Origin: Mytilus californianus
Lineage: Eukaryota
Length of the DNA stretch: 64,000 bases
Reading direction: 5' to 3'
NCBI RefSeq assembly: GCF_021869535.1
Contig: NW_026262679.1
Span: 118,420,001 to 118,484,000, forward strand
Each line of letters begins with the position of its first letter. Positions within the stretch are counted from its first letter, which is position 1. The notes under the pieces were generated by a model that was not told the origin of the DNA, searched no databases, and worked only from the letters and a program-made list of their open reading frames with translations. Of this stretch, positions 7,929-64,000 are shown piece after piece. A program made the position numbers and the translations under genes.

Positions 7929-7983
7929 ATGTCGTGGAGGTATACCTATAGTTCTGGGATAGAACCTCGATCCTCATTAACAG
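7929..7983 (+). CDS. Candidate first coding exon of the TPR gene (MSWRYTYSSGIEPRSSLT, phase 1)
   Basis: ATG at 7929, 18 codons plus 1 nt, ending at a consensus donor CAG|GTAAGT (7983/7984). Phase 1 matches the 19211 acceptor (G|AT = Asp), giving a continuous frame. Support is by phase only. Confidence 0.45.
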
Positions 7984-8291
7984 GTAAGTAATACGTTTCT
8001 CATTGATTGACCAAAAATGTGTTACTTTTATTATGAATAGATTGTACTTTGATAATGCTTTGTACATTTATGTACTATCAAATTGTTTGTATGTCATTGT
8101 ACATGTGTTAAGGTATTTTCGTGTTATCAATTGTTCTATAAATACTCAATAGAGTTCCTATTCATAAACTACACTTTGAATAGCAAAAAGCTTTTTGCAT
8201 TTAACACCCCCATCATTTTTGTTTGGAACTATAATATTATTAGTCCTGCGTTGGTTTTATTCAACATGTTCAAATATTGAAAGTGATCTCC

Positions 8292-9571
8292 TATCTCCTA
8301 CTTTTTATATTCAGCACATACACTATTCCTGTCAAGTTCAACCAGACATCCTAATGAACTTAAGATTTAACTTTATTAATCTTAAAGCTTTAACCAAAGT
8401 CCTTCTAGATGCAACGCAACGGTTATAACTTGCAATTCCAAACTTCATACAATCGACAAGACTTAAATGTAAGTTCTTTATAAGTGCTCACAGATAGCCT
8501 GAACCGACTTGAATGTAAACACTAGCATATCAGACACCCTTACACTCCTTGCATGGTTATATGTGACGGTGGTGATATTTCATACCAGCATGAGGATACC
8601 CCAAGAACAGTTTGATATGCACACTAATAGACGAATACTAAGCACCAAAAAGTCACTCTCATTAATTTTATTTCCACATTGTTCTTTCAAGAAAACCTTT
8701 ACACACAAGGATATGTTTACAGTCAGACAAGCAAGCATTTACTAGAATTAAAACCACGTGACACAACCTCTATCAGTCGACTTGTTCTAAAACAGGTTTA
8801 ATGACAATAATTACATTAACGGGATCATAAAATATGTAACAATTTTCAAAATAATTTTTCTTCGTTTCCTGATGACCAATAGTCCACGACAATTTTAACT
8901 TCCATCAGCCCCGCACAACCAAACCAACGTATCCGGATGTCACGAATATATTTGTATATTCCCAAAGTTATATCAGAGATATGGATCACATAAAACAATA
9001 TCAAGAGCATAACACCTATTCTGGAACAGGTATCATAAGAACTCCCTTTTAATGGGAGATTTTCTGACTAAAAAAGTGTGATCTTTGCTATCAAGTCTCG
9101 TTATTCAGTTGAACTAAATTCCCCTATCTGAATAACTATGAACTATATTGCCTAAGCGATTGTATTCCTACCAAGATGTGACAGGTCCAATTTTCCGGAA
9201 AGAGATGAAGACTGAACTATCTAACAAAGTGCGGAAAAAACCTCGATAGCAGTCTGGTGTTTCAAGGAGCGAAATTAGAAACTTTCACTATGCCTTTCAC
9301 TTGTCTAGAAGTTTCGAAGATAGAATATAATTTTTTAAACAGGAACTCATTAAGCCATTTTAGGATATGCTATCAGTACTTCGTCGAATGTTCGGTTCAA
9401 TAGATTACAGAGAACATAATAGAATTTATCAAACAAACTTGGTTGTATGAAGTCTGAAGTTCTTTGGTCTATAGAGTATAGTTATCTTATTGGCAATCAT
9501 TCCGTATCTCCTAATTTTTATATTCAGCACATACACTATTCCTGCCAAGTTCAACCAGACATCCTACTGAA
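8292..9571 (+). repeat. Pair of 67-bp direct repeats (8292-8358 and 9505-9571), 1213 bp apart
   Basis: tatctcctac/atttttatattcagcacatacactattcctgt/ccaagttcaaccagacatccta a/c tgaa; 3 mismatches in 67 bp. Confidence 0.85.
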
Positions 9572-21624: not shown

Positions 21625-24600
21625 ATGGTTGAGCAGACGAGTCAAAATGAGTCAACCACATCCAGTGGCAGTTTGTCTGACTCCTATGACATAGCTGTCA
21701 AAATGCTTAGCTCATCACAGATTGATGAGGCAGAGAAGCAATTTCTTTTTCTCTATCAACAAATGCAGGAAAAATCAGAAGATACAACACAGATTCTTGT
21801 TCAAACATTGAATGGGCTTGCTGATGTCTGCACCCGAAGAAGTCGTATGTGCCGGTCCAATCCGATGGAATGGCAGTGGCTTTGTATGCATGCAATTGCT
21901 CTCCTTCAATATACAATGGAAATTTGTGATTCTGAATTAGAAACAGAAATGGAAAATGATACAATTGAATGGTACACAGAACAAAAGCACGATCTTGAAC
22001 AGAAATGTAAGCCTTTAGAAGACAGTCTAAATAGAGCTTTATATAATTGTATGAAACATGAAGCAAGAAAATATTTGGACCCTTTTCGTTCATTTTCTCT
22101 CCCCAATACTCCTGGAACACCATCAAGAAGTATGTTTCCTTTATCTACTGGAAACAAATTCACACTATATTCAACCATGCATTCTCAAATCATTAGTAAA
22201 ACCAATGAAAACCAAAGTGCTGATGATAGCCATTCTGGCCTGTCATGGCTATCCAAATTCCATCAGTACTGTAATGACAGACTTCAAACCAAAAATATAG
22301 GGACTATTTTCAATAGACTTTTTCTTAAAAGGCAGAATCATTCCAAGCATGAAAATGATGATACAGAAAGTGTGGTATCAGGAGGTTCTTTAGATTGGGA
22401 TCATAGTGATTTAGATAGGGAAATTTGTAACGGTCATCCACCGGACGAGGAATCAGAGTCTCCTGTCAAAGAACATTCACTTGGTTTTGAACTTGCTGCA
22501 AGTGACATAAACAATGAAGGATGGGATTTCTTCTTAGGGGATCGCAAGAACTGTACTTTTGAAAGTGTAGTACAAGTAGCGTCAAATCCACATCATACAA
22601 ATGGACCTTCGAAAAAAGACATTATTGACATTCAAAGAAGAGAAAGCATTAAAGAAAAAGAAGTTGTCTCCCCCTTACATGATCATAGTATTAAACTGAC
22701 TTTGACAAAATGTTATGCTAAGTTAGCAGATAAACTAATGACAGAGGAAGAATATGCAAATGCAGAAGTCATCTATGAACAAGTGTTAGAAATTGTCGAT
22801 GAAATTCAAGATGGTACTGCTGGCATGCTTAGATTTTATGCTAGACTTCTCAAGAATTGTGGAACTGCAAAATCAAAACAAGGAAAAATGTCTCAGGGGT
22901 TAAAATTACTGAACAAAGCGCTTGAGACCTATCGTGACTTACAAGATGATGAGGCTAATTTTGAAATAGCTCTTGCTTTATTGGAACTAGGAAATGGTTA
23001 TGTTACTGGTCGAGATAAAGACAATGCTGTGTTCAGTTATGCTATAGGTGCCATTTGTGAATTCTTCGAAAAAGACGGATCTGATGATGTTACAAGCTCT
23101 ACATCAAGTTCAAAATCTGAGTTTTCTTCACCTGAGAAAATTGAGGAAGAGCAGAATATTGATGATGCAATACAGTGTTACAAAGAAGCTTTACACCTCC
23201 TGCGTAATCATGAAAGTCAAAGTGAGGGAAAGCAATCAGATTTGGTTGCAAGATCGACTAGAAGATTAGCGGACTGTTACTTTATGCAAAAAGAATATGA
23301 TAAGGCACTTGATTGCTATGAAAAATCTTTATCCATGTTAAAGAATACTCAATCAGTAGGACGAGATCTTGTCTTAGAAAATGCTCATGTGTTGTGTATG
23401 CTTGGTGTCTCTAGTTTTATGCTGCTAATGTTTCCAAGAGCTGCATCAACCTTTGAACTGGCTTTACACATGGTAAAGTATGCCTTTTCGCTTAAAAGTA
23501 CATTTTTCCATGGACTTTTACTGGCCTTAATGGGAATTACATTCTATAAAATGAGAAATTATCATCGTTGTGTATCAATGTGTTTTCAGGCTTTCGAAAT
23601 ATTTTGTGCCCTACATGGTGATAAGTTACCAGAATTACCAAAGCATAAATTCTGGCTTGTTTGCCAAGTTCTCTATGTCATGGGAAATTCTTACAATAAT
23701 CTGAACTTGCATCAGAAAGCAATCAAATATCTTTCAGTGGCAAGATCAGTATTAATGGCATCTAAAAATAGAGATCGTCGACAGTTCATGAGAGTATTGC
23801 AAATTTTAGGAGATTGTTATTTTGCTCAGTACGATTATAAATCAGCTTTACAATTCTACAATGAAGCCCTGGAGTATGGAGATTGTGAAAGTCAGATTTC
23901 CTTCAACGAAGTTTTTGATGCAAATGCCAATTCTGATGAAATGTCAATGCACAACCAGCTTGTTAGCAAATCTGCAGAGGCTCACATTAGCATGCAACAA
24001 TATCAAAATGCAGTACACTATCTGGAACAAGCTCATGACATGCAAGAAACGATGGGAGATGATATTAAAGGAGACTTGGCCGCTACTCTTCATTCTCTTG
24101 GACAAATGTACTGTGGAGCAGGAGATGTGGATAAAGCAATTGATTCGTATAATGAAAGCTTAGAGGTCTACAGAGAAATTCATAATGGAAATTTAGGGCC
24201 CGAAGTCGTTTCAACATTAGGAGATCTTGCAGCAATGTGTTATGTAAAAGCCTGTCTTTGTGATGACGTCGATAGCGAGTTGGAAATGATTGTGGCCACT
24301 GAAAAATACTTCCAGGAAGCTCTAGCTCTTGGGAAAAACCCAGTAATAACTATTCGTTATGCAAATTTTTTATTTAGCCAAAATAATTATGTTGATGCTG
24401 TTAAACATTTGAAAACTGTTCTAGAGATAGAGGACATTGAAACAGCACAAGATCTGGTGTATGGTGGTTTAGAAAAAGTCACTCTACCAGATGTCCTACA
24501 AGATGAAGTGGACTGTCAAGAAGAAGTCGTACTCCCACCATCCTCCCTTGCCAGATATTTATTGATATTATCCCATATAAACTTGGGCCATACAAAACTT

Positions 24601-31202: not shown

Positions 31203-31297
31203 TCATGACTTTGCCACTACTTCAAATCCATTTTGTCCAGGTATGAGATCTTCCATTTCACTTGTTACTTTGGGTAAATCATCAATGCAGAAGAAAT
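31203..31297 (-). CDS. TERB2: TERB2 coding exon 6 (terminal; putative MAJIN-binding segment) DFFCIDDLPKVTSEMEDLIPGQNGFEVVAKS*
   Basis: Acceptor ttttttttcag|; 2+93 nt; TGA at 31205-31203. Resembles recalled human GYISIDAMKKFLGELHDFIPGTSGY. Confidence 0.85.
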
Positions 31298-31310
31298 CTG
31301 AAAAAAAAAC

Positions 31311-31431
31311 CCAAAGAACATCATCTTATCCACACATACACTATAAAAAAAAACCAAAGAACATCATTTTATCCACACATACACTATAAAAAAAAAACCA
31401 ACAAACATCATTTTATCCACACATACACTAT
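31311..31431. repeat. 43-44-bp VNTR (~2.8 copies) abutting the TERB2 terminal-exon acceptor
   Basis: ccaaagaacatcatyttatccacacatacactataaaaaaaaa units start at 31311, 31354 and 31398. Confidence 0.9.
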
Positions 31432-32062
31432 CAAATATTAATGTTTATTTCATACTTTGAATATGGAATTTTTTGCTTAAATATTTCACAATCAGATAAA
31501 CTGCTTGAAAAATACCCTGCTAGAATAGTTAATAAATATTAACAATATGTGAAGGGAACACTTGTCATATGATGTAAGAATTATGTGAAAAGATCATATA
31601 TTGAAATTTGGACCCACATTCACAGTAGGTCAACTTGTCTTGTGATTTGCACCTTCTGTTTTCTACTTTATATTTTAGTTATGTGTTGTTTATGGTCTTC
31701 TGCTCATATTATTTGAGTCACTGTTATTATAAAAATATTGGAGTGAAATACACATAAAAAGTGTACATTATAAATATGTAATCACAAGGCCTTCAACAAT
31801 TAGCACTAGTGTGCTCTATGGAAAACTGTCTTGAGACAACTATTTTTTTTTTTCCTTTATGAGGTTATATCATTACATTCAGTGGTTCAATTCTTACAAT
31901 TAGTCAGATGCGTTGTGAGGGGCACAATATCCAAAGACATTTTTGCATTCAATATCACACTATATCATTTGAAAATTATAATTATGCACAATCAATAACC
32001 ATCAACAAATTTTCTGTTTTATTTGGGATTACCACTAGAAGACACTGATAAATAAAGAATAC

Positions 32063-32489
32063 CTTGATTATGTTGACTCTTGGTCTGACTAGAATGTCCA
32101 TTTGTATTGACATGTGAGTCCATTGTACCTTTATCAGTGTTATCTAGTACAATATCACCAACATCAATATATGGTAAATCACTGTAATTTTTTGGAGTTC
32201 TTTTGCGGAAACTGTAATTTTGCACATCTTCATTTGATTTTCTTTTATCACTACTAGTATTTGATTTTGGTTTATGTAGTTGAGAATCATTTTGTCTTTT
32301 TGAATTTTCCTTTGGTGAATTAGCTAACAATGAAGCATTTTGTCTTTTTTTAGATGGTGTTGCCTTTGGGTCTGTCTTCCCATCAAGTCTTTGTCCATCA
32401 CTTTTCTTTCTATCATTGTCTTTATTAGATTTTAACCCTGTATGCTGTGTATCTTCACCAATATGAACACCAACTGTTTTTTCATCATC
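32063..32489 (-). CDS. TERB2: TERB2 coding exon 5 (142 aa, low complexity, K/S/D/N-rich)
   Basis: Acceptor ttactaattag|GAT GAT, donor CAA G|gtattc; 427 nt, phase 0 to 1, open throughout and phase-compatible with both neighbours. Confidence 0.8.
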
Positions 32490-35350: not shown

Positions 35351-36979
35351 AACATATTTATATTATCAGGATGGTTTTGTTAGTCAGTTACAGACATATA
35401 GCTGAATTTATATTCACTTCTTATGTATAAAGAAACATGTGGAGTCTTACAGCAAAAGAATATTCCAAGGGCAAACAATAAAATAGTGTTAACCCATTAA
35501 ATTCAATACTCACAGGCTTTAACCAGACATAATTTAATCTACTTTTTCATAATCTTCTTATTTTTGGAGAAAAAGAAATTGCTTAAAGCTGTTCCAGAAT
35601 TTATTGTGTTGGGGGGTCAAAGGCAGTTTTATAAAATTTAATGAGTGGTGAATATTTTAGAAAGTTTGGTTGTACAATTAGAGAAAAAAATCGCTTAAAA
35701 ATTTCATGCATGGCAAGGTCAACTGTAAAAAAAAAAATATATATAGGGTTCAACAGAACCATGTGTCTCATCTGCTATTGCTGTCGTCAATATATTGTTG
35801 GCTGTGAAGTCCATTTATCAGTAAAGTAGTGATGTATTTTTTAATGGTACTTTTCTTTTAAAGATGCTATTTCTTGATCTTTCATAAATTTCTTTCCAAG
35901 TTTAATAACATGTCATGAAAGTTAAACAAAGTTATCGATTTCTAAATTTGTTTTATCCAAGCCTGAATGTAAATGTTTAATCGGTCACATATATGGAATA
36001 AAGAGCTGCGCCAAGAGCGCATGATACGCCAGTTGCTTTTTCAAAGAATAAAGTTCCATAACTCCTCGATGTCATACCAGAAATGTATAAAAAAACTAAA
36101 GGGAGGTTATTTTGATAGATATAAAACAGTCACCAAAGTTTCATGAAAACTGCTCAAAGCATTTTTGAGTTATTGTCTGAAACTTGACATATGGACGGAA
36201 GGACAGACGGACAGACAATGGTATACCATAATACGTCCTGTAAATGGGCGTATAAAAATGAAGACGTTATAACTTAATCATAAAAAATCCTCTTTCCAAG
36301 TTTTGTAAAATTCTATGAAGGTTTGACAAGTTATAAATGTTTGGAAACTTTAGGCTGTACCTTAATGTGATAACCAATTTTTTCCAGTAAAAAACATAAT
36401 AAACAAGAATGTGTCCATAGTACATGGATGCCCCACTGGCACTATCATTTTCTATGTTCAGTGGACTGTGAAATTGGGGGTCAAAACTCTAATTTGGCAT
36501 TAAAATTAGAAAGATCATATCATAGGGAACATGTGTACTAATTTTCAAGTTGATTGGACTTCAACTTCATCAAAAACTACCTTGACCAAAAACTTTAATC
36601 TGAAGCGGGACAGACGGACAAACGGACAGACGCGTAGACAGAAAAACATAATGCCCCTCTACTATCGTAGGTGGGGCATAAAAATGGAAGAAAATGTTTT
36701 CAATATTTTGCTCTTGGTAGTGTCTTTTGATCATACCAAAGCTTCTGTGATTGTCCAAGTTTCTTAACCATTGTTATCATGCCAAGGAGGTTTAACTAAG
36801 TTATTGATGTCTAAAAAAACTTTAACCACAAACTGAACCTAATTGTTGACAATCCAGACTAGACCAGAATGTATGATTACTATGTCTTGTTTCAGGCTTG
36901 ACAAAAATTCCTTCAGACACCTCCCCCATACATTAATTTTTAAAACAGCCCTTACAATTTTCTGATGAAAAGAGCTTAC

Positions 36980-37061
36980 TGTTTTGTATCTTTACTGTCA
37001 GCATTTTCACTGAATATAAATTGTGCTGAGTCATAATCAGCTTGTTTTCCTCCTTGTTCCT
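36980..37061 (-). CDS. TERB2: TERB2 coding exon 2 (KEQGGKQADYDSAQFIFSENADSKDTKQ)
   Basis: ttgttttag|...CA|gtaagc; 82 nt. Resembles recalled human AEGGTISDPRAADFLFSCDASHPDT. Confidence 0.9.
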
Positions 37062-38697
37062 CTAAAACAAAAACAAATATGATCAACTTTTTAATTAAGA
37101 GAATTATCCTCTTTAACTTAAACAAATATGAATACTTAAAATGACAGAAATATCCTCTAAAACAAAATGATTCTTTTTATTTATAGCATTATTCTCTATT
37201 AACAACAAGAATCATGTGTAGTGCTAAGCATATCCCCACTCATAACCTAAAGTACTGTAAAACTGGAAGAAGGTGTTTAACAGATCTCAAAAAGGCATAC
37301 ACATTACAAATGATCATCCCTGTTGATTTTGTTTACCTCCATTAAGGTAGCACAATACAAAGATTTTTTCAACCACAATCAGACAACTTTAAACTGATGT
37401 AATTTCTTTCATCCAACTCTAAAATTCATAAATGAGGAACCAAAAGAAAGAAGAAAGATTTATCTTTCAAATGGTGATAATTTCATTATTACAAAATTAT
37501 TACAAGTTTGCAACCTTATTTCGTAAGAAATCACCCAATTTAATTGGGTATAAAATTTGTTCTATTGATGTTTTTGGAAATCTTAGACACGGTTTTGGAG
37601 ATAACTGGTCAAGGAACAACATGTGGTAAAATCAGGCATATAGGGGCATCTGTATAGGAGCTAATTTCATTTAAAATAACATTTTCATGACAAAAATGTA
37701 TGTGTCACAATTGAATAAATAAGGATTTTCCTATTAGAACCCCATTAACTTCAATATCATTCACACATGTACCATGGGGATACTTCAGGATCATAAATCA
37801 ATTAGGTTTTGACCAGTAAGTAAGCATTCCATTTCAGCAATTCTAAATATATAAAGAAAATGCACATCATATGCATCAAAAACCAGATCTGGCGAGAGAA
37901 GTTATATTATATTTGACCTTGCTGTAAGTCAGTTGCTACTGATATGGTCAAAACTCCACCCACCTTGCACTTGCTTTTTTCAATATGGATTTTTTTATTC
38001 AATTAGAACATGAAACAATATATTTTGTTTTAACATTTTCCCAAAAAGTAGTACATAAAATCATCAGTTGGTCAGTCTAGAGGATTCTTATGGGGGATTT
38101 CTAGAATTATAATTGTATACAATGAAAATATATAATTTTACACAAAGTAGAATTTTCTTATTTTTGTAGTTGGAAAATAAAATGTTTAATTTTGTGTTTT
38201 CTTTTAAATAGAATTCATATTACACATTCTCCTCAAGAAAATCTGATATAACCATCAGCATTAACATAAGCAACATTAATTGCTGTACATTTATATTTGA
38301 TTCTCTCTATAGCTCCAAATTATTTTTTTGTTTTTTTCTCCTGGCAGCTCCAATACAGAAATGTATTTTTATTTGTATTTCATTATCTTCTTTTTTCTAA
38401 AAACCCTGAATTCAACCTCTTTTCTATGACTGTTATTTTTATAGCTGGTCAGTGGTCATAAAGCTATCAAATGATTCTATTATAAACCACAAAGTACTGC
38501 ACACATGTTCCTATTTGTATCAGTCAGACACATGCATTTGTTTATAAAACTAAATATCATCAAAACTCATAAACAGTGCAAGATATGGAAACTTATTTTT
38601 CTTCTGAGGTTTAGTAATATTAAAAAGTAACAAAAACAGCTGAAAATGAAATTTTGATAAAATTTAGTTGCTTTTGTATTGTGTTACCTTAAACAAG

Positions 38698-38935
38698 GGC
38701 CTCAGTGGCCGTGTGGTCTAAGTGGATCATTTTCTGTATTACCATCCTGATGTTATGAATTCAAACCTAGCACATGACAGGTGAATTTCACTCCTATCTT
38801 AATAGGACAAGCATTGTCAGTTTTCCTGCCAAAGTTGGTGGTTTTCTATGGCTTCCTCCACCAATAAAAACTGACCACCATGATTTAACCAATAATACAC
38901 AAAGTGGCATAAAACACCAACAATCAATCAATCAT
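38698..38935 (+). mobile_element. tRNA-derived SINE
   Basis: A-box-like tggccgtgtggtctaag, degenerate B-box gaattcaaacc, and a 3' tail aataaaaactgaccaccatgattt...aagtggcataaaacacc ending in caat repeats. Confidence 0.7.
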
Positions 38936-39642
38936 TTAACCAAATTTATCAGCAAACAGGAACTAGGTATCTGACAGATCTGAAAAATGCTCACACACTA
39001 CAAATCGCCACGGTCAAGTTGCTAACCAGATATGAAGCCATTTTGTTGAACTGACAGACAGACAAGGTAATTGCAATAAAACATTTAGGAGTGGGAGTAT
39101 AAGACTAGTCTTTTAATAAGATTCTAGGTATTATTAGAAATAGTTGGTCCAATTTGTTACTGTGTTGACCTTTTATCTGCACTCACTGTTGCGAATTATG
39201 TATAGACATTCGGAAAGCTATATTTAACATTTAATGCCCTTGACAGACAAGAAATAACAGTATAAAGAGCTGCAAATTTCATGCAATGTAATAAGTACCT
39301 GGTAATTTAAACCATTTTTAAATAACAAGACGGGTGTCTCATGTGGAGCAGAATCTGCTAACCCTTCCAGATCACCTAAGATCACCCCTGGTGTTTGGTG
39401 GGGTTTGTGTTGCTCAGTCTTTAGTTTTCTATGTTGTGTTTTGTATACTGTTGTTTGTCTTTTGATCATTTTTCATTTTTGGCCATGGCATTCTAGGTTT
39501 GTTTTGATTTATCAGATTGAATGTCCCTTTGATATCTTTCGTCTCCCTTTTGTGTTAAATGTCACAAAAATATTACCCAAGTCATACATGAATTATAAAT
39601 GTTATTAATTACAAATATTATCAAATTATTTTTAATAATTAC

Positions 39643-39727
39643 TCCATTTTGTCTTTCTTTCAGTTGAAACACTATCAGAAAACCATGCAGTCAGATCTTG
39701 AAATATTGGCATATTCTCCGACATCAT
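39643..39727 (-). CDS. TERB2: TERB2 coding exon 1 (MMSENMPIFQDLTAWFSDSVSTERKTKW)
   Basis: Acceptor at 39735 (tgtatccttttttcag|), in-frame TGA directly before ATG 39727, donor TGG A|gtaatt. Resembles recalled human MFQGQRGWFCGSVSQDLRQFW. Joined CDS 85+82+137+62+427+95 = 888 nt = 295 aa plus stop. Confidence 0.9.
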
Positions 39728-40439
39728 TCAGTTTCTGAAAAAAGGATACATAAATTATCTCCTCGACAGGAACAATAGGACACATTCCTTAAAATAAAAA
39801 AACTTAAAATTTAGGCATATTATTTTATAGAATTAATTTAAATCAAATACAAATATTATGATACATGAGATTGCATTTATAAATAGCACTGGAACTCAGT
39901 ATACTGCATCAGAATATAAAGGAGTTACTTATTTGAAGGTCAAACAACATTTTTTCAGCAAAATAGGGAATAAAAGAATATTCAGTCTGTATATCCCCAT
40001 CATTTTATCATTCATTTTTTTAGGCTAAAACTTATTTTTCTTATAAAAATGTGTTCGATAACTGCACGAGTCTAGGTAGACCCATCTGGACACATTATAA
40101 TGACTTCAAGCTATTAAATGTACCAGAATATGCTCATGCACCAATACAAGTTATAATTTCAAATAGCTCTAATTGTAAAGTGTTTTGGTTTCAACCTGGC
40201 TGGGAACTGAATTCATGACACTCTCACCCCTACTCACGAAAAGTAATAATCAAGGACATTTAAAACCATGAAATATATCTTTATTTTTCATATCTCTGCG
40301 TTTAAAAAAAAAAACTCCTCTTCATATATATATACAATCCCTTATTTCTATCATCAATTTCTTAAGGTATTCATGTAGAGAAGGGAAAACCATCCCATGT
40401 AACAAATTATCAGCCAGCTTCTCTGCATATGTTAAAACT

Positions 40440-40605
40440 ACCTTGGTGGTCTCCTGGTAGCATGTTCCCCTCGAGGGAGGTTATGGGTTTTAACCCGGGC
40501 CAGGTCAAACCAGACTTCAAAATTTGTGTATTTGCTGCTTCTTCGATAAGCACACACCATTGAGAAGTAAGAGCAAAGACAGGTCTTGAGTTTAGAATAA
40601 TCATA
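40440..40605 (+). mobile_element. Degenerate tRNA-derived SINE (CORE-type body)
   Basis: gggttttaacccgggccaggtcaaaccagacttcaaaatttgtgtatttgctgcttcttcgataagcacac...agtaagagcaaagac follows the recalled mollusc SINE head/body pattern. Confidence 0.6.
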
Positions 40606-41039
40606 TCAATCATATTCTATTGTATCGATCGTTTATGGGTTCATCAATTTAATCAACTGTCTCATCTGGTTTTCAAGGTCCAGGTTCATATTAAATTGTT
40701 ACAATATCATCTTTAGAATTGATCAATTCAATCAACTAACTGCCTTTTCTCGGTTTCAAAGGGTCATGATTGTATTCAATTGTGATCAATCATATCTATC
40801 ATTACAATCAAGGGGTTTGTGAATTTTACTGCGTTGATACATGTACTTGGTAATCAATCATATTTATTGTAAATTAATGATTGAGGGTTTTCAATTTTTA
40901 ATGAGTTGATTTAGATGATAGCTGGTTATCAATTGTGACCAAGAGTTGATTGAGTTGAAATTTGCAGTTCAATCAATGTTTATAATGTGTAAATTTGTAA
41001 CTATCTTTGCTGCATCGAATTTGTCAGTATGTTTGTTCG

Positions 41040-42600
41040 TGGTTAGACCTGGTGTTTGCTTTTCTTTTAATTAGTATGTCAGTATATGGTATGGCAATTT
41101 TGTTGTTGGTGATTCTATGGAACATATTTGATCGGCTTTTAAGTCTTCTTTCTTATGATGGCCAGTGAAGTGTGTTTAGCATGTTTGTTACACTTTCAGT
41201 ATATTGGTATTAAGAACATACGTATCTTGCTGCACGTCTTTGGACTTTTTCTATGGAGTTTATGTTCTCAGTTGTGTAAGAGACCCAGATAGTGCAGCAG
41301 TATTCTAGTTTTAGCCTGATAAGGGCTTGGTATGCTTGGTCTTTAATGGTTACCGAGTTTATTTTTAGATTTTTTCTGATGAATGCAATGGTCTTGTTTG
41401 CATTTGATGTCATGTTCTGAATGTGTTTGTTCCACTTTAAATTTGATGATGTTATTACGCCGAGATATTTTGCATTTTCAACTGAATCAAGAATGTGTCC
41501 ATGCATATCATAATAAAAATGAATAGGTGTTTTCTTTGTGGTCACTCGAAGTATGTTCCATTTGTCAGGATGGAACTGCATTAGTCATGCGCAGTCTTGT
41601 TCCCACTTGATTGCCCCTTCTAGGTTTTCTTGGAGTTTTAGGCAATCTCATGTTGATTTTATCTGTTGGTAAATGATACTGTCATCAGCAAAGAGCCTGA
41701 TTTGACTGTGATGTAAATAGTCAGGTAAGTCATTGATGTATATTAAAATAGTATTTGACCTAATTTAGCGCCCTGAGGAACACCTGATGTAACTGGTATA
41801 TCGTCAGAGGAATGGTTTTCTAGTATGACTGTTTTTGTACAATTAGATAGGAAAGATTTCATCCAGTTTGTAGCTAATGTTCTGATACACAAAAAAATTT
41901 AAGTTGATAAAGTAATCGGTTGTGTGGAACTTTATCAAAGGCTTTTAAAATATACAAACCGATCTAATCATCATGGATTTCACTAAATTAGTGAAATCCA
42001 TGATGATTAGATCGGTTTGTATATTTTTATCGTTATTTGAACTTCAAGATAGCTGGTAAATCAGTGAAATTATCTGGGATTCCCTAGACCTACTTGCCCT
42101 GAAGCCGTGTTGCAAGTCATAAAGTATGTTGTTCGATTCAATCAAGGTGTGTCATGATGTTGCTTGCAAGTATGTGCTCTAATAATTTACAGGAAATACA
42201 TTGAGATTGGTCTATAGTTCCCAGGATGATGTCCGTCTCCTTTTTTGAAAACAGGTGTTACTTTGGGTGATTCCAATCATATTTCCTGTAAAAATTAGAG
42301 TGAGTATGTTTGTGCATGTGTTAATGTTTTCTTTTAGCACTATTCAGGTGAGTGAGTATTCCAGTTATGAATGTTATCTGGTCCTGTTGCTTTTTTACTT
42401 TTTAGGATTTATATTTTTAATTAATTTATAGATGCCTTCCTGTTGATGTCTATGTTGTCCATTATTGGATGTGTTGATGGACCTTTGTCAGGGATTACTG
42501 TATTAGTCTCAGATGTAAATGCTGATTTAAATTGTTCGTTTAAGATATTTGCTTTTTTCAAGGGATCTGTATGACTGTGGACACCCTGGACCATCGTTTA
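41040..42600 (-). pseudogene. Decayed 5'-truncated LINE (CR1/L2-type reverse transcriptase) in TERB2 intron 1
   Basis: Minus-strand motifs QTDLIIMDFT/KAFDKVPH, TSGVPQG, YINDLPD...IRLFADD, QFHPDK...YLGV, KVQRRAARYV, with frameshifts. Ends approximate. Confidence 0.9.
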
Positions 42601-42765
42601 ATTGATCAATTAAAAAGGTACCTATTTTGTTTCAGATCTTTTTTAACTGTCTAATGCTTAGCGAGACAATGACATGATATCTCACATCTAAATTTATTAC
42701 CAAACGCAAATGATGTTTGTCAAGTTGAATTTCCCGGACTTTTCGTCTGCAATAAATATTCTTAC

Positions 42766-42995
42766 GCCTCGTTAGCAAACAACCACTCTTCGTAAATGCT
42801 ACAATATCAAAACAGATACACCGACATGATCGAATTATTTTTTACTTAACATCCAATTTAAAAAAAATAAATTCATTTTAGCGGGAAAACTCTCATAAAA
42901 AATGTCTTCTATTTTTATGCGCGAAAATAACCGGTTAAGTAATTCGGTTGACTTCCGGTTCCCATCTTGAAAGCTTCTTATCTTTCTTTTAAAGA
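42766..42995. promoter_or_regulatory. Putative bidirectional promoter of TERB2 (-) and MBD2/3 (+), including the TERB2 non-coding exon 1
   Basis: Minus-strand donor gaggc|gtaaga at 42766/42765; E2F-type GCGGGAAA (42881-42888) and GCGCGAAA (42919-42926); ETS-type ACTTCCGGT (42951-42959); locally CpG-richer; MBD ATG at 42996. Confidence 0.7.
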
Positions 42996-43108
42996 ATGGA
43001 ACTAAAGAGACAGTCAGACTGTCCATCATTACCTCCTGGTTGGAGAAGAGAAGAAGTTGTGAGACAATCTGGTTTATCTGCAGGCAAAACAGATGTTTAT
43101 TACTATAG
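42996..43108 (+). CDS. MBD2/3: MBD2/3 exon 1 (MELKRQSDCPSLPPGWRREEVVRQSGLSAGKTDVYYY)
   Basis: Classic methyl-CpG-binding domain start; ends TAT AG|gtataa (phase 2). Confidence 0.95.
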
Positions 43109-44170
43109 GTATAAAGTGTTGATTGCTTTCAGTCGCCGATTTGACTCCACACTATGAGTATGACAGCATCAAGAATGGTACCATCAAGAGTAGGAAATAT
43201 TTGCCTTTGATGTGTCCACCCTGATAACTGCTCGTTTCGTCATAGTTCCTTTTCCTACTGGTTCCATTCAACATGATACCTGTTTGCCAGTCGTCTGTTC
43301 ACCTTACTTTATTTTGTTGTCTTGTTGAATATTAATATCAAGGATTTGTATAGTAAGAGAACTAAGACTATCTTTTGCTGTAATAATCCTTGTTAATATT
43401 TAATATACTATTTGAATAGATATAACATATATCTATGCAGGACGCGACGTCAATGAAACATCATAGGCTAGCCACATAGGAAACACAGAAATTCTGACAG
43501 TACTTTTAATAATCAGCCTGGGATATAACTCTATAGGGTTATTAGAGAAAATATCATACATGTGTTATTGTGGACTAAAAAATCCAAAATCGTGATAACA
43601 TATGTTTCAAAGGGGCGATATACATCCTTTGTTTTGTTAAAATGTATACAAGTTCTATTGATTTATTATTATTGTCTGAATGTATACTAAACTTTAGAAA
43701 GATATAATAGTTCATAGTTTGCCAATCATTCATAGTACACTTATGTTATCACAGAAAAATATGCCTGTAATAACTATAGGGTGTTATTACAGCTTCTGTA
43801 CATCACTTCAAAGCCTTTGCTCAGACATATATCATGCTTAATCACAATGTATTTTAATTTATTGTATGAAATAATGAGCAGAGCATGTAATGAGGTTCTG
43901 CGCAATCTTCCAAGTAATTCCCAAGTGTAAATCAAAAAAGACATGCTGAAGCTTTGCCATTACCACAAAAAAGGCATGACACAATGACATGCTATTTTGC
44001 GTTTAGATAAAATACATGTACTAGATGCATATTTCTTCATTTTTATGCACAAAAATTTACCTGATAACCAATCATATAATTCATGGTTAAAAAAGGATAA
44101 TACATGGAAAAAGTATCCAAATACATTTTGATAATAACCTTAAATTGACATGAATGAATATCTTTTTTAG

Positions 44171-44328
44171 TCCTGATGGGAAGAAGGTCAGAAGCAAACC
44201 AATGATGGCAAGATATCTAGGAGAAGGGTTTGATTTATCTGCCTTTGATTTTCGCACTGGTAAAATAAATCATTCATCAATCAGAAAAAGTAAGCGTCCA
44301 AACAGTGGTCCTTATGACTTTGCTAGAG
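44171..44328 (+). CDS. MBD2/3: MBD2/3 exon 2 (SPDGKKVRSKPMMARYLGEGFDLSAFDFRTGK...)
   Basis: tcttttttag|T...AGA G|gtttgt; 158 nt; second half of the MBD. Confidence 0.95.
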
Positions 44329-48344: not shown

Positions 48345-50500
48345 TTTAATACAAACGCAAAAATATTTTGCGGTCGTATATTGGTATGACGTTGGCGTCG
48401 GCGTCCGAAGACGCATCGGTTTTCACACTCTAAATTTGGTTAAAGTGAATGGATCTCTATGAAATTTAACCATAAGGGTCAATACCACAAAAGGAAGGTT
48501 GGGATTGATTTTGGGGGTTATTATACCAACAGTTAAGGAATTGGGGGCCAATAATAAGCATTTTTGTCGAGCCTTCCACTTTAGTCGAAAAAGCGAGACA
48601 TAGCGATCCTACATTCCGTCGGCGTCGTCGTTGTCGTCTGCGGCGTCCACAAATATTCACTCAGTGGTTAAAGTTTTTGAAATTTTAATAACTTTCTTAA
48701 ACTATCCTGGATTTCTACCAAACTTGGACAGAAGCTTGTTTATGATCATAAGATAGTATCCAGAAGTAAATTTTGTAAAAATAAAATTCCTTTTTTCCCG
48801 TATTTTACTTGTAAATGGACTTAGTTTTTCTGCCTGGAAACATTACATTCACTCTGTGGTAAAAGTTTTTAAAATTTTTTATAACTTTCTTAAACTATCC
48901 TGGATTTCTACCAAACTTGGACAGAAGCTTGTTTATGATCATAAGATAGTATCCAGAAGTAAATTTGTTAAAAAAAAAATTTCATTTTTTCCGTATTTTA
49001 CTTATAAATGGACTTAGTTTTTCTGCCAGGAAACAAAACATTCACTCTGTGGTTAAAGTTTTTAAAATTTTAATAACTTTCTTAAACTATCCTGGATTTG
49101 TACAAAACTTGGACAGAAGCTTGTTTATGATCAAAAGCTAGTATCTAGAAGGAAATTTTGTTAAAATTTTGTACCTGTTTATCCGTATTTTACTGATAAA
49201 TGGACTTAGTTTTTCTTCCAGTTAACATTAAATACAGTCTGCAGTTAAAGTTTTTAAAACATTTATTAGATTCATAAACTATCCTTGATTTATACCAAAC
49301 TTTGACAGAAGCTTCTTACAATCAAAAGATAGTATCTAAAGGAATATTTTTATTGATTTTTTTCCTCATTTTTGTTGAGCCTGTGATTAACAGCAAAAGT
49401 AGGCGAGACAATGGGTTCTGCAGAACCCTTACGAATTTTTGTAACTTCCAGACATAACTTGTGTGTTATTGTATGGATCTCTCTGACATTGTACCACAAG
49501 GTTCCATATCACAAAGGGAATGCTTGGATGGATTTTGGGGGTAATTGCCTCAAAATTTTAGGAATTAGGGGCCAAAAAAGGGGCAGTAAACAAGCATTTT
49601 TCTAGTTTCATGACAATAACTTGTGTGTAAGTGTATGGATCTTTCTAAAATTGTTCTGCAAGGTTCCATATCACAAAGGGAAAGCTGGAATTGAGTTTGG
49701 GGGTAATTGTCCAAAACGTTTTGGAATAATGGGCCAAAAATAAGCATTTTTCTAGTTTCCAGACAATAACTTGTGTTCAAGTGTATGGATCTCTCTGAAA
49801 TTGTACTGCAAGCTACCATACCACAAAGGGAAGGCTGGGATTGATTTTGGGGGTAAATGCCTCAAAATTGTAGGAATTGAGGGCCATAAAGGGGCAAAAA
49901 ACAAGCATTTTTCTAGTTTCAGGACAATAACTTGTGTGTAAGTGTATGGATCTTTATGAAATTGTACTACAAGGTTCCATATCTCAAAGGAATAGCTCGG
50001 TTTGAGTTTGGGGGTAATTGCCCTTAACGTTTAGGAATTTGGGGCCAAAAAGGGGCCAAAAAACAAGCATTTTTCTAGTTTCCAGACAATAACTTGTGTT
50101 CAGGTGTATGGATCTCTCTGAAATTGTACTGCAAGGTACCATACCACAGAAGGGAAGGCTGGGATTGAGTTTGGGGGTGACGAATCATAAGGGTTTCAAA
50201 AAATTGGGGGGGGGGGGATTTTTGTTTCCTTTTTTTTCTTTAAAATTTTCCATTTTAAATTGGTTATTTTTGATTTATATATAATTGCAAATAATAATGA
50301 TATGGTTTGAATAAGTAAATTAAAATTTTTTAAGTTCTTAGACCACATTCATTCTGTGTCAGAAATCTATGCTGTGTCAAATATTTAATCACAATCCAAA
50401 TTCAGTGCTGTATCAAGCTTGAATGTTGTGTCCATACTTGCCCAAACATTTCAGGGTTCAACCTATGCGGTCGTATCAAGCTGTGCCCAGCGGAGCATTT
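48345..50500 (+). mobile_element. Outer HINE-like element with ~150-162-bp tandem units, split by a nested element
   Basis: gcggtcgtat near both ends; the anchor gtatggatct recurs at ~49471, 49633, 49783, 49944 and 50106; first unit at ~48440. Confidence 0.75.
48561..49440 (+). mobile_element. Inner HINE-like element with ~192-bp tandem array (~3.8 copies)
   Basis: Starts tttttgtcgagcc...gcgagacatagcgatcc with a GTC microsatellite; units at 48656, 48848, 49041 and ~49233; ends gcgagacaat + perfect palindrome gggttctgcagaaccc (49413-49428) + T-run. Confidence 0.85.
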
Positions 50501-61424: not shown

Positions 61425-61541
61425 TTACAATTCTGTTTTAGATTTCTTTGACTTCTTCTTTTTCTTTTCTCCTTCATATTTTAGACCATCTGTAGATTCT
61501 TTTTTCAAATATTCTAGAAAATCAGCAACCTCTCGTCCACC
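61425..61541 (-). CDS. PDIA3: PDIA3/ERp57 last exon (GGREVADFLEYLKKESTDGLKYEGEKKKKKSKKSKTEL*)
   Basis: gtttttcag|GGT...TAA; 117 nt; basic tail and KTEL retrieval signal. Confidence 0.92.
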   Translation of the reverse strand, partial: GGREVADFLEYLKKESTDGLKYEGEKKKKKSKKSKTEL

Positions 61542-61603
61542 CTGAAAAACATTCACGATGGGGTGATTAAGTATTTTAAATCATGCATTTTTTCTAAAAT
61601 AAA

Positions 61604-61713
61604 GCAAATATTTTTCCATTGTATGATCTTTTTTTCTTACTTTTTTAAAAGGATGTGAGCAAATATTTTTTTCCATTGTATTATCTTTTTTCATACTTTT
61701 TTAAAAGGATGTG
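61604..61713. repeat. 55-bp tandem duplication in a PDIA3 intron
   Basis: gcaaatatttttccattgtatgatctttttttcttacttttttaaaaggatgtg at 61604 recurs at 61659. Confidence 0.85.
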
Positions 61714-62416
61714 TTAATGTTATACAAATAGTAATGATTGATGTCTGCTTAACATCCAGCTGTAAATAATACATGCATATTCAGGATAACAAAACCCTGC
61801 TTTGCACTGTACTGAAATGCGGAGTTAGGTTGTTTTTTGCGCTTTGTTCAGATCTGGTAAGCCATACCATTTCCAACTGATTTTTAAAATTTATTCTTAT
61901 TTGAACTGTTACAACATAGCCCCAGGTAAGGGGAAGGGTTGAGCGCTCACAAACATATGTTTACATTCTTTACATGCCTGTCCCAAGTCAGGAGCTTGTA
62001 ATTCATTGTTTGTCATTGGTTGCTGTCTGTTATATCTGTTTTTTGTTTATAAATCAGGCCATTTTTTTCGTTTGAATTGTTTCACATTTTGCCATGTCAC
62101 TGTCTAATAAAGCTGACTATATATATGTGTATGGGTTTTGCTCATTGTTAAAAGCCATCTGATGACCTCAAATTGTTTATATCCATTTTATTTGGACTCT
62201 CTTGGATAGTTGTCTCATTGGCAATCATACCACATCTCATTATTTAAAATATTGTGGGGAAAGGTCTTTTACCCAACCGTACATTATTGTTTTTTTTTGT
62301 AGCCATTGTACCTGATGACAGATTTTTTGAAATCTTCCCCACTTTTCAAATTTGACCTCAAGTGCTAACAGATCCCTACATGCAAAAACAGCCTATTTAT
62401 AAAGAATGATACTTAC

Positions 62417-62474
62417 GTTATATTTTTTAGGATTATTTTTGGAATTCTTTGGTTTATAATAAATAGTTGGGAAT
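62417..62474 (-). CDS. PDIA3: PDIA3 exon (FPTIYYKPKNSKNNPKKYN)
   Basis: ttttctactttcag|A TTC...AAC|gtaagt; 58 nt. Confidence 0.92.
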
Positions 62475-63213
62475 CTGAAAGTAGAAAATGACAAGTAATG
62501 AAGTATGACAAACCAATATAATAATTATAAGTAATCTATATCTTGAACAATTGTTTTCATTCATATTATCTATTTACTATATATTTTTTCACTTAAAATC
62601 ACCTTTGCTATTTACTATTAAACTATCAATCAAATAAACAAATCAAAATTGCTCAGTAACTCATGGCTCAAATTTCCTTTAACAAATTAGCTTTCAGTGA
62701 AAGAACTTAATGTCTTTAAAAGACATTATCAACTGACTGCCCCAAGTGCTCTTATATTGATCATGAGGCCAATTTTCTATAACTCTCTATGGACAATTGA
62801 AAATAATCATTCTAAAATCACAGCAAGTGATCTTTCAAAAATAATAAACTTTAATAATCAGAATAAATTAACCTGGTGTGAGTGAGGCAGGTATTTCAAA
62901 CAGGTAAAACTTCCTGTTTTGTATTTCAATAAAAACATTGATGATTTGTTATTGGTGCTATTAAAATTGGGAGGGCATTTCAAAAGGTTAATGATGATGA
63001 AATAAGAAGCATGTTTATTAGATAATTTCATTAATAATTTTGATATGCAAGAATTGACTTATTTATAATCATAATTCAAGGATTATGAAATGTGATGCAT
63101 GGCTGGACAAAGATTGGGAGTCTTGTCATACATTAATTTGAACAAATAATTGATGCCAGCATAGTTTCTGGTGACAATGTTTCATGCTTGATTTACATGT
63201 CCAGTGTACTTAC

Positions 63214-63293
63214 CCTTGAACTTCATATGGTTTAGGTACATCATTTGCTGTAGCATCCATTTTAGCTATAGTTACTCCAGTTTCTTCCTTTAA
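63214..63293 (-). CDS. PDIA3: PDIA3 exon (LKEETGVTIAKMDATANDVPKPYEVQG)
   Basis: gttaacag|TTA...GG|gtaagt; 80 nt; AKMDATANDVP motif. Confidence 0.95.
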
Positions 63294-63824
63294 CTGTTAA
63301 CAAAACATAACAGATTAACACATTGTTCATACCTATGGTCAGAAGTGTGATGATCAACTCATAGAAAATGTGCAGATATTATTTTGTGGTGCATACATTT
63401 ATAACAATACAGGTAAATACTATTCATACAGTCTTAACCTTACAATTGACAAATACAACCAATGTAGATTGATCAAACAAAAATAAAACCATTTAATTTA
63501 GGAGTGTGTAGGAAATTTGATAAACAGTCTCTGTAACCAGCAGTATTTTTAGTTTGTTTACACAGTATTTTGAGTATTTTGTGAGACTAGTTTGTCATGT
63601 GTATCCTTTATAAGCCTCCTTAGGATTGTGTGGTTTTTGTTTAAATATACAACTATTCGTTTAAGATTTGATAACTTGTGATCCAATATCAGTGTTCAGT
63701 TCAAACAAGTCTCAGGTTAATCCAGTATTTAATTTTCCCTGCACAAGCAGTACATTATGCTATTGAAATTAAACTACAAATTTAGCACAAGTATACATGT
63801 TTAATCTGAAGTAAAAGTATTTAC

Positions 63825-63953
63825 CATTTCTCCTAATTCTGCAAATTTAGGTTCTAATGATTTACAATGTCCACACCATGGAGCATAAAATTCTATCAAT
63901 ACGTCTCTACTGTCATCATTTACAATTTCATCAAAATTCTTAGCAACAACAGT
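63825..63953 (-). CDS. PDIA3: PDIA3 exon with the a' active site ([43 protein letters not shown]); gene continues beyond the window
   Basis: ttttcag|ACT...ATG|gtaaat; 129 nt; WCGHC thioredoxin motif. The downstream text (PYEV-GFPTIY, PKKY-GGRE) fits ERp57 better than ERp72. Confidence 0.95.
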
Positions 63954-64000
63954 CTGAAAAAATATGATAAAGACAATGGTTTATTGTGTTTTATATGCAT

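What the first reader, a model, noticed from the sequence alone, without database searches (positions are those of the whole stretch)
42766..42995. TERB2 and MBD2/3 head-to-head across ~230 bp with twin E2F sites and an ETS site
Seen: the TERB2 ATG exon has a strong acceptor and an in-frame stop just before the ATG, so a non-coding exon 1 must lie upstream. The best donor I found (gaggc|gtaaga, 42766) is 230 bp from the MBD2/3 ATG. The gap holds GCGGGAAA, GCGCGAAA and ACTTCCGGT. Established: E2F-family complexes (DREAM, E2F6/PRC1.6) and CpG methylation silence germline genes in vertebrate soma, and MBD2/3-NuRD reads methyl-CpG. Inference: a meiosis-restricted gene may share a promoter with a broadly expressed methylation reader, which raises the question of how directionality is controlled and whether MBD2/3 feeds back on its neighbour. 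I do not know of a description of this pairing. This is the most system-like lead in the window.
Basis: partly seen in the sequence, partly recalled or inferred. Interest (0 to 1): 0.72.

Follow-up and report, generated by a model that had tools for sequence, protein, structure and literature searches.

The report
Ancient TERB2–MBD2/3 divergent gene pair
In the California mussel, a meiosis gene (TERB2) and a chromatin-reader gene (MBD2/3) are transcribed in opposite directions from one promoter patch of about 240 bp, and the same back-to-back pairing occurs in an oyster, a limpet and an acorn worm, so it probably predates the protostome-deuterostome split and appears to be undescribed.

Summary

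- **Identity of the window.** Window 32996-63581 is 100% identical to Mytilus californianus JAKFGE010000003.1.
- **MBD2/3 (+ strand).** Exon 1 has its ATG at 42996. The RNA contig 5' end is at 42952, inside the ETS site.
- **TERB2 (- strand).** It does have a non-coding first exon next to MBD2/3. One spliced RNA contig covers 42715 to 42622, then joins 39734 (GT..AG, 2887-nt intron holding the LINE fragment).
- **The gap.** The mapped 5' ends lie at most 236 bp apart. This stretch holds the window's only two GCGSSAAA sites, its only ACTTCCGG and its only CCGGGAAA. CpG o/e there is 1.3-1.9, against 0.40 for the window.
- **Conservation (new here).** A TERB2 (-) / MBD2/3 (+) head-to-head pair is also annotated in Crassostrea virginica, Patella vulgata and the hemichordate Ptychodera flava. 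The arrangement therefore most likely predates the protostome-deuterostome split.
- **Motifs.** The twin E2F sites are specific to mytilids. Only the ETS core recurs in all four lineages.
E2F/DREAM silencing plus MBD2/3 feedback has no support here.

Verdict: a new member of a known kind, namely a conserved bidirectional-promoter pair.

The parts
42622..42715 (-). TERB2 non-coding exon 1, the part seen in RNA; the true 5' end may lie further right
   Evidence: Run X13, contig 14, positions 1-94 lie here. The contig then joins 39734 with GT..AG on the minus strand.
39735..42621 (-). TERB2 intron 1 (2887 nt), containing a degraded reverse-transcriptase/LINE fragment at about 41200-42594
   Evidence: The joint skips 2887 nt with ends CT..AC on the + strand. 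Weak RVT_1 hit on 41746-41892 (E 0.0064).
39643..39734 (-). TERB2 exon 2, the first coding exon: ATG at 39727, TGA just before it, donor TGGA|GTAATT
   Evidence: Contig positions 95-186. Pfam PF15101 profile positions 1-22. The TAWFSxSV...W motif and the donor phase are conserved in oyster, limpet and acorn worm.
36980..37061 (-). TERB2 exon 3
   Evidence: Pfam PF15101 profile positions 21-47 (E 0.0012). The acceptor and donor fit the reading frame. Homologous exons are found in L006, L015, L016 and L017.
31203..31297 (-). TERB2 last coding exon with stop codon; C-terminal DDLPK...IPGxNG motif
   Evidence: Pfam PF15101 profile positions 175-205 (E 0.0029). tblastn hits in L015, L016 and L017. 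Weak hits to human TERB2 C-terminal chains 6GNY, 6J08 and 6GNX (E 0.35-0.6). The middle exons between 31298 and 36979 were not resolved.
42716..42951 (.). Shared divergent promoter region between the two transcript contig 5' ends (at most 236 bp)
   Evidence: Contig ends at 42715 and 42952. CpG o/e 1.3-1.86 against 0.40 for the window. 77-83% identity to a related mytilid contig, against 55-63% in introns.
42730..42737 (-). CCGGGAAA, an E2F-like element one base off the consensus, just upstream of the TERB2 contig 5' end in TERB2 sense
   Evidence: Only match in the window. It lies in a block at about 42728-42752 that is identical in L002.
42881..42888 (+). GCGGGAAA, a consensus match to the E2F site
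   Evidence: Changed to GGCGGAAAA in L002.
42919..42926 (+). GCGCGAAA, a consensus match to the E2F site
   Evidence: Identical in L002. No strict E2F consensus is found in the orthologous intergenic regions of L006, L015, L016 or L017.
42951..42959 (+). ACTTCCGGT, an ETS/GABP-type site at the MBD2/3 transcript 5' end
   Evidence: The X7 contig starts at 42952. The ETS core is the only 7-mer shared by all four lineages within 400 bp of the MBD2/3 ATG. It sits at -34 in the same orientation in Patella.
42952..43108 (+). MBD2/3 exon 1: 5' UTR from 42952 or further left, ATG at 42996, donor AG|GTATAA
   Evidence: X7 contig 23 and X13 contig 15. Stranded raw reads of X6 reach depth 12, all in the sense of the + strand. 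Pfam MBD.
44171..44328 (+). MBD2/3 exon 2, second half of the MBD domain; ends approximate
   Evidence: The loose end after 43108 reads on into this exon. Pfam MBD.
61428..64000 (-). 3' part of the downstream neighbour, a PDIA3-like protein disulfide isomerase; part of the conserved block, not of the promoter
   Evidence: The best PDB matches are PDIA3 chains. A thioredoxin-domain gene in the same position and strand is the neighbour in C. virginica.

Best explanation
The stretch is the shared divergent promoter of an ancient head-to-head gene pair in Mytilus californianus.

Shown:
- MBD2/3 (+ strand) transcripts begin at about 42952, within an ETS-type site.
- TERB2 (- strand) transcripts begin at 42715 or further right. 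They give a non-coding first exon of at least 94 nt, spliced across a 2.9-kb LINE-bearing intron to the ATG exon.
- The patch has kept its CpGs in an otherwise CpG-depleted region.
- The pair, its orientation and the TERB2 exon-phase structure are conserved in oyster, limpet and acorn worm.

Inferred:
- Both genes depend on one nucleosome-free, germline-unmethylated promoter patch. A break between them would damage both, and that is why the pair has stayed together since before the protostome-deuterostome split.
- An ETS (GABP-like) factor is the common driver, as at human bidirectional promoters.
- The E2F-like sites are a mytilid-lineage addition that tunes proliferation- or germline-linked output. 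They probably act mainly on MBD2/3, since they lie 33 and 71 bp upstream of its 5' end.
- TERB2's restricted expression would then need a further direction-specific input that has not been identified.
For: - Spliced contig joining 42715-42622 to 39734-39643 with GT..AG. MBD2/3 contig starts at 42952. Stranded reads cover exon 1.
- Motifs are unique to this stretch within 64 kb.
- CpG o/e 1.3-1.86 against 0.40.
- Footprint against a related mytilid: promoter blocks 77-95% identical, introns 55-63%.
- Window 32996-63581 is identical to M. californianus. The annotated upstream gene there carries PF15101 TERB2.
- The same neighbours in the same orientation in C. virginica, P. vulgata and P. flava. 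I confirmed these with tblastn of three collinear TERB2 exons.
- Strong acceptors lie 7-10 nt before the TERB2 ATG in three bivalve sequences. In the oyster sequences CpG o/e near that exon is low (0.14-0.26) and is highest beside MBD2/3.
- In P. flava the ATG-to-ATG gap is only 717 bp and retains CpG over most of its length (o/e 0.71-1.56 against 0.50 for the locus).
- The ETS core recurs in all four lineages.
- GABP and E2F4/6 are over-represented at human head-to-head pairs (PMC4089025). Conserved 5'-5' pairs are explained by shared regulation in PMC3514665.
Against: - The TERB2 first exon rests on a single assembled contig of depth 4.6. Contig ends are not start sites, and no CAGE or 5'RACE was available.
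- The donor GT at 42621-20 reads GA in the related mytilid contig L002.
- TERB2 was absent from two of three RNA data sets that contain MBD2/3, so co-expression is not shown. The tissues are unknown.
- Factor binding is inferred from motifs only.
- The ETS core count (1 shared 7-mer against 0.62 in shuffles) is not significant by itself.
- Conservation was sampled in four lineages only. An unidentified 89-kb contig (L001) shows no TERB2 within 10 kb upstream of its MBD exon.
Confidence: 0.72

Rival explanations
1. The twin E2F sites recruit a DREAM-like or E2F6-like repressor that, together with CpG methylation read by MBD2/3-NuRD, silences TERB2 in somatic tissue. MBD2/3 thereby feeds back on its neighbour.
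For: The E2F-consensus sites cluster only here in 64 kb. GCGCGAAA is fully conserved in a related mytilid. A third E2F-like element sits at the TERB2 end. From established knowledge, E2F/DREAM complexes repress germline genes in worm and mammalian soma.
Against: - The strict E2F consensus is absent from the orthologous intergenic regions of oysters, limpet and acorn worm, where the pairing persists.
- One of the twin sites is altered in the close relative.
- No CHR element (TTYGAA) lies in the gap; the nearest is 752 bp from the ATG.
- The twin sites are 33 and 71 bp from the MBD2/3 5' end, but at least 166 bp from the TERB2 contig end.
- CpG o/e of 1.3-1.9 shows no germline methylation, and there is no somatic methylation data.
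- From memory: E2F6 is a vertebrate paralogue, and bivalve methylation is mainly in gene bodies.
Confidence: 0.1
2. Two separate promoters that merely abut. The TERB2 first exon reflects upstream antisense transcription from the MBD2/3 promoter that happens to splice into TERB2. Adjacency persists only because so short a gap is rarely hit by breakpoints.
For: Only one low-depth contig supports exon 1. The donor is not conserved in L002. MBD2/3 is seen without TERB2 in two runs. Apart from the ETS core, the promoter sequence is not alignable between phyla.
Against: - Head-to-head adjacency is kept in four lineages spanning protostomes and deuterostomes.
- A strong acceptor lies just before the ATG in three bivalve sequences, and there is no CpG-retaining patch at the ATG exon. 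This argues that the distal first exon is the normal structure in bivalves.
- The TERB2-side block at about 42728-42752 is identical in the relative, which suggests its own constrained elements.
Confidence: 0.13
3. The main meiotic TERB2 start lies elsewhere, directly upstream of the ATG exon or inside the LINE fragment, and the contig shows a minor isoform.
For: Limpet and acorn worm have no obvious acceptor before the TERB2 ATG, so a proximal start is the likely state in those lineages. No gonad-specific RNA data could be examined.
Against: The only transcript evidence uses the acceptor at 39734. No reads or contigs cover 39750-42600 as an exon. CpG o/e near the ATG exon is low in the two oyster sequences, and in Mytilus the retaining patch lies at 42600-43000, about 3 kb from the ATG exon.
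Confidence: 0.05

Closest known systems
Conserved ancestral microsyntenic pairs in 5'-5' orientation (Irimia et al. 2012, PMC3514665), e.g. HSPD1-HSPE1
   Same: Two unrelated genes are kept head-to-head with a short intergenic region across phyla. The proposed cause is a shared bidirectional promoter that breakpoints would disrupt.
   Different: The classic examples are co-expressed housekeeping partners with related functions. Here one partner is a meiotic telomere adaptor and the other a broadly used NuRD subunit. The pair is not retained in human. I could not see that paper's supplementary list, so I cannot exclude that the pair is listed there under an old gene name.
Human GABP/ETS- and E2F-bound bidirectional promoters (Collins et al. 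2007, cited in PMC4089025)
   Same: The start sites are less than 1 kb apart, the promoter retains CpGs and I saw no TATA box. An ETS consensus sits at the start of one gene and E2F consensus sites lie between the two.
   Different: Binding was not tested. G+C is not raised (30-33%); only CpG retention marks the patch. The E2F sites are lineage-specific.
E2F6/PRC1.6- and DREAM-repressed germline gene promoters
   Same: A meiotic gene with E2F-consensus sites near its promoter.
   Different: There is no CHR element and no E-box in the gap, the E2F sites are not conserved where the pairing is, and there is no evidence of repression. This is a resemblance only.
Vertebrate TERB2, MBD2 and MBD3 loci
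   Same: Orthologous genes. Human TERB2 (15q21.1) still lies in the band next to PDIA3 (15q15), and a PDIA3-like gene is the third member of the mollusc block.
   Different: In human the MBD genes lie on 18q21 (MBD2) and 19p13.3 (MBD3; from memory), not next to TERB2, so the pairing is broken.

Membership tests
Bidirectional (divergent) promoter gene pair | Two genes on opposite strands, 5' ends facing each other | tested here: met
   TERB2 on the minus strand, MBD2/3 on the plus strand.
Bidirectional (divergent) promoter gene pair | Transcription start sites less than 1 kb apart | tested here: met
   RNA contig 5' ends at 42715 and 42952, so at most 236 bp apart. These are contig ends, not mapped start sites.
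Bidirectional (divergent) promoter gene pair | Transcription in both directions from the shared region | tested here: met
   A spliced minus-strand contig and plus-strand contigs plus stranded reads.
Bidirectional (divergent) promoter gene pair | Correlated expression, or dependence of both genes on shared elements | tested here: inconclusive
   Both genes appear in run X13. Only MBD2/3 appears in X6 and X7. The tissues are unknown and there is no reporter data.
Conserved ancestral microsyntenic pair | Orthologues adjacent in distantly related phyla | tested here: met
   Mytilus, Crassostrea, Patella (Mollusca) and Ptychodera (Hemichordata).
Conserved ancestral microsyntenic pair | Orientation conserved | tested here: met
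   TERB2 (-) upstream of MBD2/3 (+) in all four, with ATG-to-ATG gaps of 717 to 3268 bp.
TERB2 (Pfam PF15101) | Match to the family profile, including the N-terminal and C-terminal conserved segments | tested here: met
   Three collinear pieces hit profile positions 1-22, 21-47 and 175-205, each below the curated cut-off on its own. The annotated 295-aa product carries PF15101 without a weak mark. Only weak hits to human TERB2 C-terminal chains.
MBD2/3 | MBD domain plus the MBDa and MBD_C domains | tested here: met
   Pfam MBD on exons 1 and 2. PF01429, PF16564 and PF14048 on the annotated 253-aa product P0185.
E2F/DREAM (CDE-CHR type) repressed promoter | E2F or CDE site paired with a CHR element (TTYGAA) near the start site | tested here: not met
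   E2F consensus sites are present, but no TTYGAA lies in the gap; the nearest is 752 bp from the MBD2/3 ATG.
E2F/DREAM (CDE-CHR type) repressed promoter | Sites conserved in orthologous promoters | tested here: not met
   The strict consensus is absent from the L006, L015, L016 and L017 intergenic regions. It is conserved only in part in the related mytilid L002.
E2F/DREAM (CDE-CHR type) repressed promoter | Occupancy by E2F/DREAM and derepression on its loss | not testable with these tools
   This needs ChIP or CUT&RUN and knock-down in mussel tissue.

The most novel reading that the evidence does not exclude
TERB2-MBD2/3, with PDIA3 nearby, is an urbilaterian linkage held together for more than half a billion years by one bidirectional promoter. 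The promoter couples a meiotic telomere-attachment gene to the germline-active promoter of a NuRD subunit. In vertebrates the pair was split by differential loss of duplicates after the two whole-genome duplications: TERB2 and PDIA3 stayed on the 15q15-q21 segment, and the MBD copies survived on the 18q21 and 19p13.3 segments.
Probability: 0.4. Interest if true: 0.7.

Novelty: new member of a known kind. Interest (0 to 1): 0.56.

Why it matters
Deeply conserved head-to-head pairs are few, and most link co-expressed housekeeping partners. A pair that joins a gene needed only in meiotic prophase to a broadly expressed chromatin reader, kept from molluscs to hemichordates, is a natural test case for two questions. 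One is how a single short promoter gives different expression in its two directions. The other is why such linkages resist rearrangement. The pairing also gives a simple positional marker for finding the fast-evolving TERB2 gene in invertebrate genomes: look upstream of MBD2/3. It further yields a testable account of how the vertebrate loci came apart.

Tried and rejected
- **Word search with the 156-aa stop-free TERB2 stretch 32022-32489.** It found nothing.
- **Brute-force enumeration of the TERB2 middle exons to match the annotated 295 aa.** It gave many equally valid chains, so exons between 31298 and 36979 are left unresolved.
- **tblastn of TERB2 exons on L001, an unidentified 89-kb contig.** Only chance-level hits. 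The best looked like the tail of a retroelement ORF (my reading, not tested).
- **Look-ups of P0009, P0010 and P0012.** They gave no record, no DNA, or contigs too short to be useful.
- **The bacterial-type promoter scan.** It does not apply to an animal genome and was ignored.
- **PDB sequence search with TERB2 exon 3.** It found nothing relevant.
- **Motifs looked for in the gap and not found:** E-box CACGTG, NRF1 and GC-box.
- **Irimia et al. 2012 supplement.** It is not held, so I could not check their pair list.
- **Middle of the window.** I first suspected that the LINE fragment might supply the TERB2 start. The spliced contig rules this out for the transcript seen.

Full report
**What is in the sequence.**

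The stretch 42766-42995 lies just upstream of an ATG at 42996. That ATG opens an exon encoding the first half of a methyl-CpG-binding domain (Pfam MBD, E 2.4e-11). The second half is encoded from about 44171.

- GCGGGAAA at 42881-88
- GCGCGAAA at 42919-26
- ACTTCCGGT at 42951-59

The pattern GCGSSAAA occurs only at these two places in the whole 64-kb window on both strands, where 0.99 matches are expected for the whole window. ACTTCCGG also occurs only once. A third E2F-like element, CCGGGAAA, is likewise unique to this stretch, at 42730-37 on the minus strand.

CpG observed/expected is 1.3-1.86 across 42600-43000, against 0.40 for the window. G+C is not raised.

**The upstream gene is TERB2.**

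Three stop-free pieces on the minus strand hit Pfam PF15101 in collinear order:
- 39635-39727, profile positions 1-22
- 36979-37176, profile positions 21-47
- 31206-31325, profile positions 175-205

Each piece on its own scores below the curated cut-off.

Window 32996-63581 is 100% identical to Mytilus californianus JAKFGE010000003.1:118452996-118483581. In that record the upstream minus-strand gene has a 295-aa product that carries PF15101. [quoted passage not shown]

I could not resolve the TERB2 middle exons.

**Where TERB2 starts.**

The RNA evidence comes from one call on window 37150-43149.

An assembled contig of run X13 (363 nt, depth 4.6, minus strand) lies on 42715 down to 42622. It then skips 39735-42621, whose ends read GT..AG on the minus strand, and continues on 39734-39643 and beyond. 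This shows three things:
- TERB2 has a non-coding first exon beside MBD2/3.
- Its intron 1 contains the degraded reverse-transcriptase fragment (weak RVT_1 hit).
- The donor used is at 42622, not at 42766.

The contig does not reach 42766, so use of that donor in other isoforms is not excluded.

For MBD2/3, a 978-nt contig of run X7 starts at 42952, inside the ETS site. The stranded raw reads of X6 cover 42950-43149 at depth 12 in the sense of the plus strand, with none in 42750-42949.

The two 5' ends are therefore at most 236 bp apart. Contig ends are not mapped start sites.

TERB2 was seen in one of three RNA data sets and MBD2/3 in all three. The tissues are not known to me.

**Close-range conservation.**

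A 956-bp contig from a related mytilid (L002) aligns over 42580-43144. Identity by region:

| Region | Identity |
|---|---|
| Introns | 55-63% |
| TERB2 exon 1 | 69% |
| 42716-42800 | 77% |
| E2F/ETS block | 83% |
| MBD2/3 5' UTR and coding part | 95% |

- GCGCGAAA and the ETS site with its flank are identical in L002.
- GCGGGAAA reads GGCGGAAAA in L002.
- A block at about 42728-42752, containing the CCGGGAAA element, is identical in L002.
- The donor GT used in Mytilus reads GA in L002.

**Deep conservation of the pair.**

Using MBD2/3 proteins found, I looked up the genomic neighbourhood in annotated genomes. The gene immediately upstream of MBD2/3, on the opposite strand, carries PF15101 in all three:

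| Species | TERB2 position | Gap to the MBD2/3 ATG at 10001 |
|---|---|---|
| Crassostrea virginica | 3857-8740 (-) | 1260 bp |
| Patella vulgata | 842-7961 (-) | 2039 bp |
| Ptychodera flava (hemichordate) | 4796-9283 (-) | 717 bp |

I confirmed each case by tblastn with three Mytilus TERB2 exons, which hit collinearly on the minus strand. An oyster-like Logan contig (L006/L007) shows the same layout.

The splice phase after the conserved tryptophan of the first coding exon is the same in all.

Three bivalve sequences have a strong acceptor 7-10 nt before the TERB2 ATG. In the two oyster sequences CpG o/e near that exon is low and is highest next to MBD2/3. This fits a distal non-coding first exon as the bivalve norm. 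In Ptychodera the 717-bp gap retains CpG over most of its length (o/e 0.71-1.56 against 0.50 for the locus).

The pairing is thus shared by protostomes and a deuterostome, and most simply predates their split.

**What is and is not conserved in the promoter.**

The strict E2F consensus is found only in Mytilus and in part in L002. It is absent from the intergenic regions of the oyster sequences, the limpet and the acorn worm.

Within 400 bp of the MBD2/3 ATG, the only 7-mer present in all four lineages is the ETS core ACTTCCG/CGGAAGT:
- -45 in Mytilus
- -34 in Patella, same orientation as in Mytilus
- -268 in L006
- -131 in Ptychodera

One shared 7-mer is not significant as a count (0.62 expected), but it is the motif known to direct bidirectional transcription in human (PMC4089025, citing Collins et al. 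2007).

No CHR element, E-box, NRF1 site or GC-box lies in the Mytilus gap.

**Interpretation.**

The best reading is a bidirectional promoter of an ancient microsyntenic pair, of the kind surveyed by Irimia et al. 2012 (PMC3514665).

It was wrong in the splice site.

The regulatory model is not supported. That model combines E2F/DREAM, methylation silencing and MBD2/3 feedback. Three points count against it:
- The E2F sites are lineage-specific.
- They lie much closer to the MBD2/3 start than to the TERB2 start.
- CpG retention argues against germline methylation.

Somatic methylation and factor binding could not be tested.

**Wider context.**

The downstream neighbour on the minus strand (61428 onward) best matches PDIA3 among solved structures. 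A thioredoxin-domain gene holds the same position in the oyster. A TPR-repeat gene at about 23243-24320 matches the oyster's upstream neighbour.

Human map positions:
- TERB2: 15q21.1 (PMC8004677)
- PDIA3: 15q15 (PMC3500226)
- MBD2: 18q21 (reference title in PMC2361113)
- MBD3: 19p13.3 (from memory)

From memory, these three regions are duplicated segments of the vertebrate genome, for example TCF12/TCF4/TCF3 and ONECUT1/2/3. This suggests that the pair was split by differential loss of duplicates. I did not test this.

**Novelty.**

TERB2 in molluscs is already reported (PMC7227075), and the adjacency is visible in public annotations.

In the library searched, only one paper names both TERB2 and an MBD gene, and it is unrelated. 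None of the eight papers with both TERB2 and 'bidirectional' concerns this locus, judging by their titles and abstracts. The scan's own notes hold nothing on the pairing.

Noticed in passing
window 61428-64000 (-): The downstream neighbour is a PDIA3-like disulfide isomerase with a lysine-rich tail ending in KTEL. A thioredoxin-domain gene in the same position follows MBD2/3 in C. virginica. Human PDIA3 (15q15) and TERB2 (15q21.1) lie in adjacent bands, which hints at an older three-gene block.
   Followed up: partly
window 38750-38950 and 39350-39550: Two short stretches in TERB2 intron 2 reach summed contig word depths in the thousands (up to about 284,000 in the 39350-39550 stretch in run X1) in RNA-type contig sets of two organisms, with many variant joints. 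They are probably dispersed SINE-like repeats.
   Followed up: no
window 41200-42594 (-): A degraded reverse-transcriptase (LINE-like) fragment lies inside TERB2 intron 1, in the same orientation as the gene. It accounts for much of the larger ATG-to-ATG distance in Mytilus (3268 bp, against 717-2039 bp elsewhere).
   Followed up: partly
window 48400-50200 (+), MBD2/3 intron: Several copies of a 160-190 bp unit at 80-87% identity give staggered self-matches in the blastn of L013 against the window, indicating a tandem array in an intron.
   Followed up: no
L017 1-2946 (-), Ptychodera flava: The next gene beyond TERB2 in the acorn worm is CTC1, another telomere-maintenance gene. This may well be coincidence.
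   Followed up: no
window 23243-24320 (+): 71% nucleotide identity to the TPR-repeat gene that precedes TERB2 in C. virginica. The conserved block between mussel and oyster therefore spans at least four genes.
   Followed up: partly
L010 (hydrothermal vent metagenome contig, PRJEB15554): It carries an MBD2/3 exon 2 identical in protein to the Mytilus exon. It is presumably host DNA of a vent mussel in a symbiont metagenome.
   Followed up: no
L001 8384-8524 (-): In an unidentified 89-kb metagenome contig with an MBD2/3 exon, no TERB2 was found within 10 kb upstream. The region holds microsatellites and what looks like the tail of a retroelement ORF (my reading, not tested).
   Followed up: partly
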